Below the pieces are notes generated by a model. It ran no database searches and was not told where the DNA came from. It saw nothing but the letters and a program-made list of their open reading frames with translations. From positions 186,001 to 250,000 of the IMG/VR virus record IMGVR_UViG_3300030329_006583: a stretch of DNA of 64,000 nucleotides. The stretch is one strand, 5' to 3'. A program made the translations under genes and the position numbers. This document shows, piece after piece, positions 1 through 38,843 of the stretch (positions are counted from its first letter, which is position 1; every line of letters begins with the position of its first letter).

Positions 1-92
1 TCCCTGCTATAGGAGCTGTCAAACTCAGTTCCATCATCAAAGGTGCCACGATAGTGCACCGTAACCTTAGTACCATTTTCAATGTTGCTCAT
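1..92 (-). CDS. FKBP-type peptidyl-prolyl cis-trans isomerase, N-terminal part (runs off the window)
   Basis: Manual translation MSNIENGTKVTVHYRGTFDDGTEFDSSYSR has the FKBP pattern V.VHY.G...DG..FDSS; AAGGA upstream. Confidence 0.85.
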   Translation of the reverse strand, partial: MSNIENGTKVTVHYRGTFDDGTEFDSSYSR

Positions 93-147
93 TATTATCC
101 TTTGTTTTAAACGATAGGGTGCCCACCGTGCCCGCACCCCCTAGGGG

Positions 148-633
148 CTATTGTACCGTAAAAGTCAGAGTACCTCTGCCAACTTTTACTTGGGCTTCCC
201 AGCCACTAAAGGCAGCTGAATATTTGTTTTCGTGTTCTAGAACATCACTGGCCAATGCATCCACTTGCGTGGTAAGCGTGGTAAAGCCGCGCTTGTGATC
301 GTACCTCTCCGTGGATTCATCAATCATTTCCAGATCATAAAAATTATCACGCAATTGTTCTTGCACATATGTTTCGAAATCCCCATCACGCGCGTAATCA
401 TTTAATAGATCGTGATCCCGTAATTGCCCCAGAGGATCCCCGACATACGGCATCTGGAGTGGCAGTTGGCGTGTAATTACGTGTGCCAATCGCTCCACCA
501 CGTCAGTTTCTTCCAAAGCGGTTTCTACATGAGTTTCATTAAAATGAAAAACATCTGTCCCTTGCTCGTACACAAAGGTAATACGTGTAGTTTCATCTAA
601 TTTTGCGTTACTAAGATTCTTCAACAAACTCAT
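148..633 (-). CDS. hypothetical protein
   Basis: 161-aa ORF with GGAG SD; no recognised motif. Confidence 0.7.
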   Translation of the reverse strand: MSLLKNLSNAKLDETTRITFVYEQGTDVFHFNETHVETALEETDVVERLAHVITRQLPLQMPYVGDPLGQLRDHDLLNDYARDGDFETYVQEQLRDNFYDLEMIDESTERYDHKRGFTTLTTQVDALASDVLEHENKYSAAFSGWEAQVKVGRGTLTFTVQ

Positions 634-664
634 TACCGGCTCCTTTGTCCCTGGTTAAAATAAA

Positions 665-704
665 TAAGGCACCTGTTACCCCGTGCCTCCCTGCGGGTAT
701 GTCA
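665..704 (-). repeat. 40-nt repeated 3'-UTR element, copy 1 (hairpin or pseudoknot followed by a U-rich tract)
   Basis: 35/40 identical to 27786-27825; begins 1 nt after the stop of 706-909; AGGCAC/GTGCCT inverted repeat. Confidence 0.75.
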
Positions 705-705
705 A

Positions 706-909
706 TTACTTCTTCTGTACGAAATCATACAACTTATCAGCGACGATTAGAACATCTTCTGTTGCATAGGGATTAATAGGATTTCTCTGTCCCTCAGGCT
801 TCAAATGCTCATTCTCGCACTGACGGCTTTGACGATCTTGTAAGATACCAATTGCCATACCTAACAGTTCACTACGGAGTTCATACCCGCTTTTCTTTGA
901 ATCACTCAT
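706..909 (-). CDS. small hypothetical phage protein
   Basis: 67 aa; AGGAG SD; YELR.ELL.MA...A.KLY.FV pattern like small phage proteins. Confidence 0.75.
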   Translation of the reverse strand: MSDSKKSGYELRSELLGMAIGILQDRQSRQCENEHLKPEGQRNPINPYATEDVLIVADKLYDFVQKK

Positions 910-1001
910 TTTACTCTCCTTGTGTGTGTGTGTTCAACTGTTCCTCGGAACAATTCAAGAATATATCAATTGCGTTACATTGTATAACACAGAAAATAAA
1001 A

Positions 1002-1027
1002 AAGCCCGGTCAAATTTGACCGGGCTT
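1002..1027 (-). terminator. Rho-independent terminator
   Basis: Perfect 12-bp inverted repeat AAGCCCGGTCAA/TTGACCGGGCTT, then a U-rich tract on the minus strand, downstream of 1057-1257. Confidence 0.85.
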
Positions 1028-1056
1028 GATATGAGTATTCAATACCCTTGAAAGAC

Positions 1057-1257
1057 CTAGAGATTCTCGTTAAGGAAGCTCTGCAGCGCTTGCGCTTCAC
1101 GGCAGGTCAGGGTCAGGCTGGACTGACCCACACTGTACTGGCCACCCTGGGGCTGGGTTGCAATGGTAACCACATTGCTACCGGCACGCTTGGCGGTGTC
1201 ATTGCGGTTGATGGTGTAGTTGAAACGCTTGGTTGACTTTGTCTTTGAATAATTCAT
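1057..1257 (-). CDS. hypothetical protein
   Basis: 66 aa, AAGGAG SD, followed by a terminator. Confidence 0.7.
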   Translation of the reverse strand: MNYSKTKSTKRFNYTINRNDTAKRAGSNVVTIATQPQGGQYSVGQSSLTLTCREAQALQSFLNENL

Positions 1258-4464: not shown

Positions 4465-4550
4465 TGGTACCGGAGACGGGACTCGAACCCGTAAGCCTTA
4501 AAGGCGACAGATTTTAAGTCTGTTGTGTATGCCAATTCCACCACTCCGGC
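4465..4550 (-). tRNA. tRNA-Leu(TAA)
   Basis: GCCGGAG acceptor, GGTTCGAGTCC T-arm, ACAGA-CTTAAAA-TCTGT anticodon arm, long variable arm, encoded CCA. Confidence 0.95.
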
Positions 4551-25704: not shown

Positions 25705-26742
25705 TCACTTAGAATAATTAATGTGAGTAGAACTTTCAATTGCACCATTAGGTGTCTGGCGAATGAATTGGGCCCGGGCATGAAGATGTGAAATGGAATT
25801 AGCACCGGTATAAGAAAGACCTGAACGAATACCCACGGAAATTGTTTGTACAATATCGGCCAAAGGACCTTTCATTGGGATTATTGTGGCTACCCCTTCA
25901 ATAGAATTAGCGCGTCCCCGCCAATCATATTGTGCCTCGACAGACGCCATACCCCGATAGGCTTTATATGCAGTGCGCACCGAATGACCATCCACTACCT
26001 CAGATTTCTCAATAACAGCGCCCGGAGATTCAGGGGTACCGGCCAACATAGAGCCTAACATCACACAATCAGCTCCGGCAGCCAAGGCCTTCACAATATC
26101 GCCACTATTCCTAATACCTCCGTCAGCAATAAGCAGGACATTAGCATCAGCGCTAGCACAATCCATAACTGATTGCAAAGTTGGCATGCCGTGACCGGTT
26201 TGAATACGAGTGCTACATATCGATCCTCCGCCAATGCCAATCCTGACGCTATCTGCACCCCAATCGGCCAAATCCTCTACCGCTGTGCGGCTAGCCACAT
26301 TTCCTGCCATGATGTGCACCTTAGATCCTAAAACCTCCCTCAATTTAAGGAGGGCACGTTTCATGCGCACATGATGACCGTGAGCAACATCAACACAAAT
26401 CACCTTAGCACCATAGCTAACGAGAGCCCCAGCACGAGAAACATAATCTCCTGTTACCCCTACCGCAGCCCCACATATTGCCCCACTAGCCACAATTTTT
26501 TTCACCATATCAAATTGTGTTTGTGGGCTATTATATCGATGTACAATACCGAGTCCCCCCAACCTACTGATTTCGACTGCCGTATCCACACCTGTTACAG
26601 TGTCCATGGGGCTTGAAATAATAGGTAATTTCAAAACGCCAACCTTGGGAATTTCTACACTAAGATCCACCTCTGTCCGGCTCTCAATAGCTGAATACTG
26701 GGGGGCTAAAAGAACATCGTCAAAACAAACTGTTTCCCTCAT
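25705..26742 (-). CDS. IMP dehydrogenase / GMP reductase family protein (no CBS domains)
   Basis: [33 protein letters not shown] (catalytic Cys), ADGGI, YRGMAS. Confidence 0.9.
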
Positions 26743-26758
26743 TATATAACCTCATGTT

Positions 26759-26836
26759 TGGTGGGCCCTCTGGGATTCGAACCCAGAACTGACGGTTTAT
26801 GAGACCGGCGCTCTAACCTGATTGAGCTAAGGGCCC
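26759..26836 (-). tRNA. tRNA-Ile2(CAT), lysidine-type
   Basis: GGGCCCT acceptor, CTCATAA loop, A73 and CCA; resembles bacterial Ile2 rather than Met; adjacent to tilS. Confidence 0.88.
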
Positions 26837-26847
26837 GCATTACAAAT

Positions 26848-27477
26848 CTAAACAGCAACTGCCTCTTTTATAAAAAAAACAGAATTTTCTTCCATTATTT
26901 TTTTTGCCAATACCTTCCGCATACCCGGATTAACATGTAATGCGTGGGGCATCATATTGTGTCGAATAAAATTTCTCATGTATCGCGTATCATCATTGGA
27001 CACATCTTCCACATAAGGAACCCCTTTACGATCACACCAAGCATGCAACACACTCTTCGGGGTGGTCAAAAAAGGGCGAATAACATTTTGATTAGAATAA
27101 GGGGTGAGTGCCGGTTTGCCATGAAGGGATGAAAACAACCACCATTCACACACATCATCCAGGTGATGGGCTGTTACCACAGGGGTTTTCAACCCATGCA
27201 AAAATGCATATCTTTCATCCCGCCAATATTCTTCCCAGCTTTGCGATCCCACCTTCTTCATGGAAGTAGATCCTGTAATCAGCTTGAGGTTATGCGATTC
27301 ACAATAATCTTGTACAAAACTTTGGGCGTAGCCAGAATGGGGGGTATTATGATTAAAATAGGCCACTTCAATTTCACGGCCGCCGCGGCGGAGAAAATCC
27401 AGTGCCGCCATCGAATCCACCCCGCCTGAACAGGCCATTACGATCTTTTTAGGTACCTGGTTTAACAGCCTAATCAT
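26848..27477 (-). CDS. tilS: tRNA(Ile)-lysidine synthetase, catalytic domain only
   Basis: ACSGGVDSM PP-loop, AHHLDD..E, IRPFL, D.SN...Y.RNFIR; 209 aa. Confidence 0.88.
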   Translation of the reverse strand: MIRLLNQVPKKIVMACSGGVDSMAALDFLRRGGREIEVAYFNHNTPHSGYAQSFVQDYCESHNLKLITGSTSMKKVGSQSWEEYWRDERYAFLHGLKTPVVTAHHLDDVCEWWLFSSLHGKPALTPYSNQNVIRPFLTTPKSVLHAWCDRKGVPYVEDVSNDDTRYMRNFIRHNMMPHALHVNPGMRKVLAKKIMEENSVFFIKEAVAV

Positions 27478-27501: not shown

Positions 27502-27780
27502 TTGATTGAGTACAACGATTTAATAAAAATACTTATATGCATGGACCCAACGTTAATTATACTCACCTTCGGAAGCATTGTGGGATGTTTTTCCCTAGGG
27601 TTTAGTTTGGGAACCTACCTCGAAAGAAAACGCATAATTTCTCAGTATGAATGGGATTTAAATATTATGGAACGCCTAAGCAGAATTGAGGATACAGTAT
27701 CCGAATTTGAAGAATACGAAGAAAACGAATTAGATGGAATCAAATTAATTCGCATTCAATTTAATCGAACCGAAGATTAA
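27502..27780 (+). CDS. membrane-anchored hypothetical protein
   Basis: TM segment followed by a charged tail. Confidence 0.5.
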   Translation: MIEYNDLIKILICMDPTLIILTFGSIVGCFSLGFSLGTYLERKRIISQYEWDLNIMERLSRIEDTVSEFEEYEENELDGIKLIRIQFNRTED

Positions 27781-27785
27781 AAAAT

Positions 27786-27825
27786 TAAGGCACCTCTAAC
27801 CCCGTGCCTTCCTGCGGTTATATCA
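27786..27825 (-). repeat. 40-nt repeated 3'-UTR element, copy 2
   Basis: 35/40 identical to 665-704; begins 1 nt after the stop of 27827-28189. Confidence 0.75.
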
Positions 27826-27826
27826 C

Positions 27827-28189
27827 CTATTCAGAATCAACAGCGGGTGTAGTCTCACTGTTCTTGTTCTCAATAGCCTTAATAGTACTGTCATCACCAG
27901 TAACGTCACTAGTACCAGGTGTGCCTTCTTTGATGGTATTAACCTGAGGCGTGGTGGTGCCCGTTGTAGGTGTAGTCTCACCAGTAACCTGGGGTGTTGT
28001 AGTGGTGGGGGGTGTCGTTGGTGTAGTCGTTGTTGTCTCCGTTACCGTATCCGTGGTGGTTGTAGCCGCCGCAGAAGGTTCAGGGGCTTTGTTCACCAAA
28101 CCGTCAAAAGCACCAAAAAAATACAAAGCAACCAAAGACGCCCCAATTAAAATAAGCGTCAATTTATTTTCTTTAATAAAGTTTTTCAT
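27827..28189 (-). CDS. membrane-anchored Thr/Pro-rich protein
   Basis: N-terminal TM, then TTTTPT repeats. Confidence 0.7.
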   Translation of the reverse strand: MKNFIKENKLTLILIGASLVALYFFGAFDGLVNKAPEPSAAATTTTDTVTETTTTTPTTPPTTTTPQVTGETTPTTGTTTPQVNTIKEGTPGTSDVTGDDSTIKAIENKNSETTPAVDSE

Positions 28190-28549
28190 TTATTCTTCCT
28201 CCTCTTCTTCATCAGATTCATCTCCATCCTCAGAAGCTTCATTTTCGTCAATATCGCCGGATTCCTGATCGTCACCTGCTGCATCAACTGCCTCTTCTTC
28301 CTCGGTTGATTCCTCGGAATCAACTTCCTCTTCAGCAGATTCCTCCGCAACGTCTCCTTCCGTTTCCATCACATCTCCGGAATCATCCGCCACGTCACCG
28401 GTGGCATCTTCATCCTCAACTTGTGGGGTGATAGATTCCTCAACAGAAACAGTCTCCTCATCACACTCACAACCAATAGTCGTGAATACAAGACCAAGCG
28501 CAAATACGCTAATTAACATGCACATTAGTGCGAATAAACGATTCATCAA
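28190..28549 (-). CDS. acidic putative lipoprotein
   Basis: Signal peptide ending TTIGC, then an Asp/Glu-rich tail; GGAGG SD. Confidence 0.7.
   Translation of the reverse strand: MMNRLFALMCMLISVFALGLVFTTIGCECDEETVSVEESITPQVEDEDATGDVADDSGDVMETEGDVAEESAEEEVDSEESTEEEEAVDAAGDDQESGDIDENEASEDGDESDEEEEEE

Positions 28550-38765: not shown

Positions 38766-38843
<78 letters not shown>

What the first reader, a model, noticed from the sequence alone, without database searches (positions are those of the whole stretch)
665..704. Repeated 40-nt post-stop element with H-type pseudoknot potential (also at 27786-27825)
Two copies 27 kb apart are 35/40 identical, follow unrelated genes, and each starts exactly 1 nt after the stop codon. 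On the coding strand helix 1 is UACCC/GGGUA in copy 1 and UAACC/GGUUA in copy 2, so pairing is kept despite substitutions (register shifted by one). Helix 2, AGGCAC/GUGCCU, is invariant and interleaved with helix 1, followed by a U-rich tract. The unpaired CGCAGG is also conserved, more than a plain terminator needs. Inference: a structured RNA motif for termination, 3' protection or protein binding.
Basis: partly seen in the sequence, partly recalled or inferred. Interest (0 to 1): 0.6.

Follow-up and report, generated by a model that had tools for sequence, protein, structure and literature searches.

The report
Pseudoknotted terminator-like RNA of marine phages
The two 40-nt repeats are members of a large RNA family in uncultured marine phages that matches no Rfam family: a small pseudoknot built on a terminator-like hairpin that sits between genes, often where related phages carry an ordinary transcription terminator.

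Summary
Both copies lie on the minus strand, are 35/40 identical, and are the only two copies in the 267-kb viral contig.

They belong to a large family. I collected 264 distinct instances in 200 IMG/VR viral loci, and the scans were capped. No genuine copy turned up in 596 Gb of prokaryotic genomes apart from two phage-like MAG contigs.

Consensus layout:
- N-C-C, then GCAGG
- a 7-bp stem with a loop of GGGN...ANAG
- A, then a short U-run
- an A-rich spacer, the ribosome-binding site and the next start codon

Both helices of the proposed H-type pseudoknot are supported by covariation.
- Hairpin: 99% paired, four of seven pairs show double compensatory changes, and G·U occurs on the gene strand only.
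- Pseudoknot pair 12-30 occurs as C-G, A-U, U-A and G-C. Of 96 instances without G at position 30, 94 still pair.

There is no Rfam match.

In an element-independent sample of 77 gp32 genes, 43 are followed by this element and at least 13 by a canonical terminator in the same slot.

My best reading is a portable intercistronic attenuator and RNA-end structure. A ligand- or protein-responsive switch remains possible. Function is inferred, because no RNA data were available.

The parts
706..909 (-). Upstream gene of copy 1: a 67-aa protein of unknown function, stop TAA at 706-708. It belongs to a small phage protein family (cluster c21) that is flanked by this element in many other phages.
695..697 (-). 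Copy 1, helix 1 5' strand (CCC, alignment columns 12-14). In this copy the pairing can extend to 699 (UACCC).
690..694 (-). Copy 1, loop 1 (GCAGG). Invariant in the family. G at 694 co-varies with the first loop G at 682.
683..689 (-). Copy 1, helix 2 5' strand (GAGGCAC).
673..682 (-). Copy 1, 10-nt hairpin loop. Positions 679-681 are the helix 1 3' strand (GGG). Positions 673-678 are loop 3, ending in the conserved A-N-A-G.
666..672 (-). Copy 1, helix 2 3' strand (GUGCCUU; the closing pair is G.U).
657..665 (-). Copy 1, A followed by a U-rich tract directly after the hairpin.
148..645 (-). Downstream cistron of copy 1: Shine-Dalgarno AAGGAG at 640-645, ATG at 631-633, 161-aa protein of unknown function (cluster c9). 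In the multi-copy loci mapped, this family is consistently preceded by the element. An FKBP-type isomerase gene follows at the window edge.
27827..28189 (-). Upstream gene of copy 2: a 120-aa Thr/Pro-rich protein with an N-terminal hydrophobic segment, stop TAG at 27827-27829.
27816..27818 (-). Copy 2, helix 1 5' strand (ACC). It pairs in the register shifted by one base with GGU at 27799-27801, and can extend to 27820 (UAACC).
27811..27815 (-). Copy 2, loop 1 (GCAGG).
27787..27810 (-). Copy 2, helix 2: AAGGCAC at 27804-27810 pairs with GUGCCUU at 27787-27793, around the 10-nt loop at 27794-27803.
27777..27786 (-). Copy 2, A-A then U6 tract. No same-strand gene follows. The tract overlaps the stop codon of the convergent plus-strand ORF 27502..27780, so this copy sits at the end of a minus-strand gene run.

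Best explanation
The two repeats are copies of a cis-acting RNA element transcribed with the flanking genes (minus strand here).

Structure. It folds into a compact H-type pseudoknot. A 7-bp hairpin forms helix 2. The first bases of its loop (G-G-N) pair with the three bases N-C-C that lie five bases upstream of the hairpin, forming helix 1. The invariant GCAGG (loop 1) and the loop end A-N-A-G (loop 3) probably make tertiary contacts. The hairpin is followed by A, a short U-run, an A-rich spacer and the ribosome-binding site of the next gene.

Most likely function. It acts as a portable intercistronic expression module: a leaky intrinsic terminator (attenuator) whose pseudoknot also gives a nuclease-resistant RNA end. 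This would set the ratio between the upstream gene (most often the abundant single-strand DNA-binding protein gp32) and the downstream cargo genes. It would also end transcription where genes converge, as at copy 2.

Spread. The element travels with small cargo genes that are shuffled between marine phages, which is how the cassette at the start of this window acquired copy 1.

Shown: the family, the pseudoknot, its position between genes, the U-run, and the interchange with canonical terminators. Inferred: termination or attenuation, end protection, and the tertiary contacts.
For: - Family and phage specificity.
- Helix 2: 99% paired, double compensatory changes at 4 of 7 pairs, and 45-95 G.U pairs that would be A.C on the other strand.
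- Helix 1: pair 12-30 is paired in 244 of 264 instances against 136 on shuffling (p<=2e-5). Of the 96 instances where position 30 is not G, 94 pair. On a random sample the full pseudoknot gives 98.5% paired cells against 88.3% shuffled (0 of 500 shuffles reach it), and slid controls give 60% or less.
- Further structural support: pair 13-29 flips to G-C in three stem backgrounds; G15/G27 change together to A15/A27; loop 3 tolerates hairpin insertions.
- U-run: T makes up 50-72% at +3..+7 against a 31% background, G is 2% or less there, and 39% of instances have at least 4 of 5 T against 5% of background windows.
- Same slot as terminators: of 77 gp32 genes sampled without regard to the element, 43 are followed by the element and 13 by a strict hairpin-plus-T-tract terminator, with several more strong hairpins. 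Each is followed directly by the next ribosome-binding site.
- In the window's own genome the gp32-RecA spacer holds a canonical terminator.
- Copy 2 and three other copies with no nearby downstream gene carry 6-7 T among the first 9 bases after the hairpin.
- The downstream genes are functionally unrelated (RecA/UvsX-like, FKBP, Hc1-like, unknowns), which fits a general-purpose element.
Against: - No transcript data exist for this phage: no RNA run holds it, so no 3' end has been seen.
- The loop of 9-11 nt is longer than in typical terminators. The U-run is short and weak in about 60% of copies. A simple terminator scan does not call either window copy.
- The nested-fold energy is unremarkable (z -0.35 to -1.7).
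- A plain terminator or stabiliser does not obviously need invariant loop bases.
- The tight spacing to the next start codon (median 25 nt), the tandem copies and an anti-SD hairpin subgroup look like a regulatory leader.
- This genome uses strong canonical terminators elsewhere, so the element may do something they cannot.
Confidence: 0.45

Rival explanations
1. A factor-responsive switch. The pseudoknot would be an aptamer for a small molecule (a new, very small riboswitch class) or the operator of an RNA-binding protein (phage gp32, another phage protein, or a host protein). Binding would modulate termination at the U-run or access to the ribosome-binding site 16-34 nt downstream.
For: - The pattern of invariant unpaired bases next to freely covarying stems is typical of riboswitches and protein operators.
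- The element sits at a narrow distance upstream of start codons (median 25 nt, 88% within 14-36).
- The downstream contexts vary: a U-run, or in 13 of 138 copies a CUCC-N-GGAG hairpin that sequesters the Shine-Dalgarno sequence and competes with an extension of helix 2.
- Tandem copies 13 nt apart occur in L037 and L139.
- Loop 3 carries variable insertions.
Against: - The regulated genes share no common function.
- There is no match to any Rfam riboswitch, even at E<=10.
- The element can be replaced by constitutive terminators in relatives.
- It works in phages as different as 20-kb contigs and this 267-kb genome, which argues against a dedicated phage protein.
- gp32 genes carry a different conserved hairpin in their own 5' leader, a better candidate for gp32 autoregulation.
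Confidence: 0.28
2. Primarily a DNA-level cassette boundary: a conserved recombination substrate (like the PeSL cassettes of T4-type phages, or integron attC sites) that lets small genes be inserted, deleted and exchanged. Any RNA fold would be secondary.
For: - Copies bracket variable cargo genes between conserved gp32 and RecA, with 0 to 4 cargo genes per phage.
- The same cargo genes with the element occur in the unrelated context of this window.
- Adjacent tandem copies look like the scar of a deleted cassette.
- PeSL precedent: PMC2839356, PMC4122927.
Against: - Compensatory changes, strand-specific G.U pairs and pseudoknot covariation show selection on a folded single strand of the sense polarity.
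- Copies within one genome are diversified, not homogenised: for example L045 has four copies with three different 12-30 pair types (C-G, A-U and G-C).
- No integrase is linked to the element. At about 35 nt it is far below attC size.
- There is no promoter part as in PeSLs.
Confidence: 0.1
3. A small self-cleaving ribozyme or a dedicated RNase processing site that cuts the polycistronic mRNA into separate units.
For: The element is intercistronic, present in several copies per operon, self-contained and portable. It has a pseudoknot with invariant unpaired purines, as in several small ribozymes that are common in phage intergenic regions (general knowledge; PMC4604425 for pistol).
Against: There is no match to any ribozyme family in Rfam. 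At about 32-35 nt it is smaller than any known natural self-cleaving motif. No cleavage data exist.
Confidence: 0.05
4. A recoding signal: a pseudoknot that stimulates read-through of the preceding stop codon or a frameshift.
For: A pseudoknot starts 5-12 nt after a stop codon, and UAG is frequent as that stop (102 of 236).
Against: The spacing varies from 6 to 20 nt and more. The read-through frame runs a median of only 21 codons, through the element itself, and has no conserved product. The upstream genes are unrelated.
Confidence: 0.02
5. An ordinary terminator hairpin duplicated by chance within this genome, with no wider meaning.
For: A hairpin plus U-rich tail, and only two copies in this genome.
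Against: Hundreds of homologues with invariant loop bases and covarying helices occur in phages whose flanking proteins are only 40-70% identical.
Confidence: 0.01

Closest known systems
Intrinsic (Rho-independent) transcription terminators and attenuators
   Same: A G+C-containing hairpin followed directly by a U-run. It sits between co-directional genes or at convergent gene ends. It occupies the same slot after gp32 where relatives have canonical terminators.
   Different: The loop is 9-11 nt (up to 21 nt in the pattern-collected set, and longer where loop 3 carries a hairpin insertion) and has an invariant sequence. An upstream strand pairs into the loop, making a pseudoknot. There is an invariant 5-nt loop 1. 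The U-run is short and often weak. The sequence is conserved across distant phages, which ordinary terminators are not.
PeSL (promoter-early stem-loop) cassettes of T4-type phages (PMC2839356, PMC4122927)
   Same: Small conserved intergenic regulatory sequences that flank variable ORFs in plastic genome regions. They are thought to move genes by recombination, and they contain a terminator-like stem-loop.
   Different: PeSLs carry an early sigma-70 promoter. Here only 16-34 nt separate the hairpin from the start codon, and no promoter fits. PeSLs are near-identical within a genome and lineage-specific, whereas this element is diversified within genomes yet conserved between distant phages. It also has a pseudoknot.
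Phage T4/T2 gene 32 mRNA pseudoknot (translational autoregulation by gp32; reviewed in PMC3014915)
   Same: An H-type pseudoknot with a 7-bp second helix next to gene 32, followed by an A/U-rich unstructured stretch that reaches a ribosome-binding site.
   Different: The T4 pseudoknot lies 5' of gene 32 and controls gene 32 itself. This element lies 3' of gp32 and upstream of other genes. There is no sequence similarity. The gp32 genes here have a different conserved hairpin in their own leader.
Small H-type pseudoknot riboswitches (preQ1-I, SAM-II/SAM-V, guanidine-III)
   Same: Size of 32-45 nt, two interleaved helices, conserved loop nucleotides, and a location just upstream of a ribosome-binding site or within a terminator.
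   Different: No covariance-model match to any of them. The downstream genes have no common metabolic theme. Ligand binding is untested.

Membership tests
H-type RNA pseudoknot | Two helices whose strands interleave (5' strand of helix 1, 5' strand of helix 2, 3' strand of helix 1, 3' strand of helix 2), each supported as real pairing. | tested here: met
   Helix 2 is 99% paired with 4 covarying pairs. Helix 1 pair 12-30 shows four Watson-Crick types plus G.U, and pair 13-29 flips in three backgrounds. Shuffle and slide controls fail to reach the observed values.
Intrinsic terminator | Stable G+C-rich stem with a short loop (about 3-8 nt). | tested here: not met
   The stem is 7 bp with 4-5 G-C pairs (about -10 kcal/mol). 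The loop is 9-11 nt or longer, and the simple scan does not call it.
Intrinsic terminator | U-tract immediately 3' of the stem. | tested here: inconclusive
   There is positional T enrichment of 50-72% at +3..+7 against a 31% background. Only 39% of copies have at least 4 of 5 T. Copy 2 has U6. Copy 1 has UUUAUUUU.
Intrinsic terminator | RNA 3' ends map to the U-tract. | not testable with these tools
   No RNA run holds this sequence.
Rfam families (riboswitches, ribozymes, leaders; 4227 models) | Covariance-model score at or near the family's threshold. | tested here: not met
   Only tRNAs appear in the window and in 12 multi-copy loci at the gathering threshold. Nothing relevant appears at E<=10 on window 600-760 or at E<=1 on three small loci.
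Riboswitch (any class) | Direct, selective ligand binding that changes the fold. | not testable with these tools
   This needs in-line probing, ITC or reporter assays.
Riboswitch (any class) | Association with genes of one pathway or transport function. | tested here: not met
   The downstream genes are RecA/UvsX-like, FKBP isomerase, Hc1-like and several unknown small proteins.
PeSL cassette | Composite of a stem-loop and an early sigma-70-type promoter. | tested here: not met
   The hairpin end lies 16-34 nt from the start codon. No -35/-10 pair is called at either window copy.
PeSL cassette | Flanks variable ORFs in a plastic region between conserved core genes. | tested here: met
   The gp32 - [element - cargo gene] x 0-4 - RecA maps, and the same cargo genes in the window.
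T4-type gene 32 operator pseudoknot | Located in the 5' leader of gene 32, upstream of its own ribosome-binding site. | tested here: not met
   The element lies after the gp32 stop codon. The gp32 leaders carry another hairpin motif.
Integron attC site | An imperfect inverted repeat of 57-141 bp with R/L boxes, linked to an integron integrase. | tested here: not met
   The core is about 35 nt, no integrase is in the neighbourhoods, and the loop sequence rather than the box sequence is conserved.
Recoding (read-through or frameshift) pseudoknot | Fixed short spacer from the recoding site and a conserved extended product. | tested here: not met
   The spacer is 6-20 nt or more, and the extension has a median of 21 codons with no conservation.

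The most novel reading that the evidence does not exclude
The element is a new class of regulated attenuator: an aptamer of about 32 nt, among the smallest known, fused into a terminator hairpin. It would sense a small molecule or a conserved host or phage protein, and it would be carried as a plug-in control unit with each cargo gene that marine phages exchange.
Probability: 0.22. Interest if true: 0.85.

Novelty: new variant of a known kind. Interest (0 to 1): 0.62.

Why it matters
If the reading is right, abundant uncultured marine phages use a sequence-conserved, pseudoknotted form of the intrinsic terminator as a portable boundary between genes. Three consequences follow.
- It gives a compact, context-independent RNA part of about 45 nt whose two helices and loops are defined by natural covariation. 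This is useful for studying how tertiary structure affects termination and RNA decay, and as a candidate insulator or attenuator part.
- It marks the hot spot (gp32 to RecA) where these phages insert and swap small cargo genes, so it can be used to find such genes in metagenomes.
- If the loops turn out to bind a ligand or protein, it would be a new regulatory RNA class in phages whose hosts and biology are largely unknown.

The family is not in Rfam, so a model can be contributed.

Tried and rejected
- blastn of two element variants against 50,697 phage records found nothing meaningful. The window flanks also have no nucleotide relatives there apart from tRNA.
- The nearest cultured phage with gp32 next to RecA, Microcystis phage Mel-JY01, has only 8 nt between the two genes and no element.
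- A scan of prokaryotic genomes gave 70 hits. I estimate about 69 by chance for a 17-base pattern in about 1.2e12 searched bases. Only two small MAG contigs carry a real element.
- Extending helix 1 to five pairs family-wide was rejected. Pairs 11-31 and 10-32 are no better than shuffled.
- A local CC-GCA-GG mini-hairpin with a third pair between columns 12 and 20 was rejected on reading the instances listed, which show no covariation.
- A sigma-70 promoter inside the element (TTGAC after some stop codons) was rejected because the spacing is wrong and only one subgroup has it.
- Complementarity of CCGCAGG to the 3' strand of 16S rRNA helix 45 (E. coli sequence recalled from memory), and the Shine-Dalgarno-like GGAGG in helix 2, were noted as leads. 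Neither was tested.
- No RNA sequencing run was found.
- ESM Atlas look-ups of the two flanking small proteins gave no function.
- The Fremin et al. 2023 catalogue of 10,006 viral candidate RNAs (PMC10690425) could not be checked because its supplement is not held. The motif may be listed there without description.

Full report
**1. The observation**

The window is bases 186,001-250,000 of a single 267,118-bp IMG/VR viral contig (40% G+C, CheckV about 78% complete).

Both repeats read in the sense of their neighbouring genes on the minus strand.
- Copy 1 (704->665) follows the TAA of a 67-aa ORF (706..909) and precedes, by 32 nt, the ATG of a 161-aa ORF (148..633).
- Copy 2 (27825->27786) follows the TAG of a 120-aa ORF (27827..28189) and faces a convergent plus-strand ORF.

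The copies are 35/40 identical. They are the only copies in the window and in the whole contig, by pattern search, by fuzzy search and by covariance model. Chance expectation for the pattern is 0 in 100 shuffles.

**2. A large family**

A pattern that fixed the stem found 53 IMG/VR loci.

With a covariance model (R1), further divergent copies appeared next to the first ones, up to 4-5 per locus. In all I collected 264 distinct instances in 200 loci, from contigs of 4 to 293 kb.

In 596 Gb of prokaryotic genomes the stem-free pattern gave 70 hits, about what I estimate for chance. Only two small MAG contigs with phage-like content carry a real element. No hit was found in 50,697 deposited phage genomes.

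The sequencing runs that hold the window are marine metagenomes.

**3. Anatomy**

Columns refer to the gapless 49-column alignments A1 and A4.

| Columns | Feature |
|---|---|
| 12-14 | N-C-C (helix 1, 5' strand) |
| 15-19 | GCAGG (loop 1) |
| 20-26 and 37-43 | 7-bp stem (helix 2) |
| 27-36 | loop, G-G-G-N ... A-N-A-G |
| +1 | A in 77% of instances |
| +3..+7 | T in 50-72%, almost no G |
| further 3' | A-rich spacer, Shine-Dalgarno sequence, start codon |

Two searches did not fix the conserved parts, so they test them without bias.
- With stem and loop fixed, all 45 distinct contexts have CCGCAGG.
- With the 5' part and one stem fixed, every loop starts with GGG and ends with A-N-A-G apart from a single AAGG... 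loop (L265), which pairs in the register shifted by one base. Loop length in this scan runs from 9 to 20 nt.

Some loops carry an inserted mini-hairpin in loop 3.

**4. Structure**

Helix 2:
- 99% of cells are paired.
- Double compensatory changes occur at four of seven pairs: G-C/A-U, A-U/G-C, A-U/C-G and C-G/U-A.
- Pair 23-40 has 45-95 G.U pairs. These would be A.C on the other strand, so the fold belongs to the sense RNA.

Helix 1:
- Pair 12-30 occurs as C-G, U.G, A-U, U-A, G-C and G.U.
- It is paired in 244 of 264 instances against 136 expected on shuffling (p<=2e-5).
- Of the 96 instances where position 30 is not G, 94 pair.
- Pairs 13-29 and 14-28 are almost always C-G. Pair 13-29 is G-C in three loci with different stems (L362, L395/396, L398).

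On a random sample of 146 instances the complete pseudoknot gives 98.5% paired cells against 88.3% in shuffles (0 of 500 reach it), and 60% or less when the partners are slid.

Pairs 11-31 and 10-32 are not supported family-wide, although both window copies can form them.

Instances with a purine at position 12 and G at position 30 (A in 15, G in 3), such as copy 2, can use a register shifted by one base: position 12 pairs with position 31 in 16 of 18.

Positions 15 and 27 face each other at the helix junction. They change together from G/G to A/A in a subgroup that also has an 11-nt loop.

Nested-fold energies are unremarkable, as expected for so short an RNA with a pseudoknot.

**5. Context**

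- The stop codon of the upstream gene lies a median of 10 nt before CCGCAGG (IQR 8-13, never less than 6).
- The next start codon lies a median of 25 nt after the stem (IQR 22-30).
- The upstream gene is a gp32-type single-strand DNA-binding protein in 91 of 132 cases (PF08804).
- Downstream genes are a RecA/UvsX-like recombinase (50), an FKBP-type isomerase (20), a 170-aa unknown (16), an Hc1-like small basic protein (10), a 67-72-aa unknown and others.

Gene maps show a conserved replication module: DNA polymerase A fragment, unknown gene, gp32, [variable cargo], RecA-like, 5'-3' exonuclease, DnaB-like helicase. The cargo region holds 0-4 small genes, most of them preceded by an element.

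The window's own genome has this core module at 4-11 kb without the element. There, gp32 is followed by a canonical G+C-rich terminator with U8 and a TTGAAC-17-TAGAAT promoter-like site before RecA.

The window's copy 1 lies inside a cassette: 66-aa gene, 67-aa gene, element, 161-aa gene, FKBP. Its four genes are the cargo genes seen between gp32 and RecA in other phages. This points to horizontal movement of the cassette together with the element.

**6. Test of positional equivalence**

I fetched 80 gp32 relatives by protein similarity alone, from at least 596 candidates. Of the 77 that could be assessed:

| Downstream of the gp32 stop | Count |
|---|---|
| Element (including variants) within 75 nt | 43 |
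| Strict hairpin-plus-T-tract terminator | 13 |
| Neither within 110 nt of the stop, element further downstream | 9 |
| Neither element nor strict terminator | 12 |

About seven of the last 12 have long G+C-rich hairpins. In both the element class and the terminator class, the next ribosome-binding site follows within about 10-25 nt. The element and ordinary terminators are therefore alternatives for the same slot.

**7. Mechanism**

I commit to a leaky terminator (attenuator) and RNA-end structure as the most likely function (0.45).

Reasons for:
- the positional U-run
- the interchange with terminators
- the end-of-operon position of copy 2 and of three other copies that have strong U-runs
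- the unrelated functions of the downstream genes
- portability across very different phages, which favours a self-contained function

The pseudoknot may pre-organise the long loop so that a short stem folds quickly, shield the stem from upstream sequence, or block exonucleases. These points are inference.

The main rival (0.28) is a switch that responds to a ligand or a protein. What supports it:
- invariant loop bases
- leader-like spacing to the start codon
- tandem copies
- a subgroup where a CUCC-N-GGAG hairpin hides the Shine-Dalgarno sequence and competes with an extension of helix 2

A DNA-level role in cassette shuffling (0.10) probably contributes to the element's spread, but it does not explain the RNA covariation. 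Ribozyme or processing site (0.05), recoding (0.02) and chance (0.01) are unlikely.

**8. Comparison with known systems**

No Rfam family matches.

The closest concepts are:
- intrinsic terminators
- the PeSL cassettes of T4-type phages (PMC2839356, PMC4122927), which unlike this element include a promoter
- the T4 gene 32 pseudoknot (PMC3014915), which lies on the other side of the gene
- small pseudoknot riboswitches

A 2023 catalogue of 10,006 viral candidate RNAs from IMG/VR (PMC10690425) may contain the motif. Its text does not describe it, and its tables are not held. Two further full-text searches found no description.

**9. Limits**

- All functional statements are inferred from sequence.
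- Instances were collected with patterns, so conservation figures for the fixed parts are biased, except in the two unbiased scans and the gp32-based sample.
- Related sequences share ancestry, so shuffle statistics overstate independence. However, the alternative 12-30 pairs occur with 14 or more different stem types.

Noticed in passing
L054:3829-3900, L111:6574-6650, L076:2158-2230 and about 15 further loci (5' leaders of gp32 genes): A second conserved RNA-like motif sits upstream of gp32. It is an 8-9-bp hairpin whose stem covaries, with a conserved purine/A/U-rich loop of about 9 nt, followed by ACU-N-UA and the Shine-Dalgarno sequence. Some copies sit behind a TGTGGTACAAT extended -10 box. 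It is a candidate gp32 autoregulatory operator, distinct from the element studied here, and nothing in Rfam matches it in the loci scanned.
   Followed up: partly
G000:C1:7613-7770 (outside the window): In the window's own genome the gp32-RecA spacer holds a canonical terminator (10-bp G+C-rich stem, U8) and a TTGAAC-17-TAGAAT promoter-like site. Other phages have the pseudoknot element in this position.
   Followed up: yes
window 1-1257 (minus strand): A cassette of four small genes: 66 aa, 67 aa, 161 aa and an FKBP-type isomerase cut by the window edge. Homologues of these genes are the variable cargo between gp32 and RecA in other marine phages. A canonical terminator (11-bp stem, 1027->1002) separates the first gene from the rest.
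   Followed up: partly
L037:1913-2005 and L139:12745-12793 with its neighbour: Two copies of the element lie in tandem only 13 nt apart, with different stems. This could be a tandem regulator or the scar of a deleted cassette.
   Followed up: no
family-wide: UAG is the stop codon before the element in 102 of 236 cases. This seems high for A+T-rich phages, but many of these genes are homologous gp32 genes, so the count is not independent.
   Followed up: no
window 25705-27477 (minus strand): An IMP dehydrogenase/GMP reductase-family gene (PF00478, 2e-96), a tRNA gene (26762-26836) and a PP-loop ATPase gene (PF01171, 1.7e-33) lie just downstream of copy 2. These are nucleotide or tRNA-modification auxiliary genes in a jumbo-size phage.
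   Followed up: partly
window 27827-28549 (minus strand): Two adjacent low-complexity proteins: a Thr/Pro-rich 120-aa protein with an N-terminal hydrophobic segment, and a 119-aa protein with a hydrophobic start and a strongly acidic Glu/Asp-rich tail. Neither has a family match.
   Followed up: no
window 4468-4550, 26762-26836, 38769-38843: Three tRNA genes, all on the minus strand (Rfam RF00005, 57-70 bits).
   Followed up: no
element columns 13-19 and 19-23: CCGCAGG is the exact complement of CCUGCGG in the 3' strand of 16S rRNA helix 45 (E. coli sequence recalled from memory). Helix 2 usually contains GGAGG paired to CCUC, which resembles a Shine-Dalgarno/anti-Shine-Dalgarno duplex. This could be chance and was not tested.
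   Followed up: no
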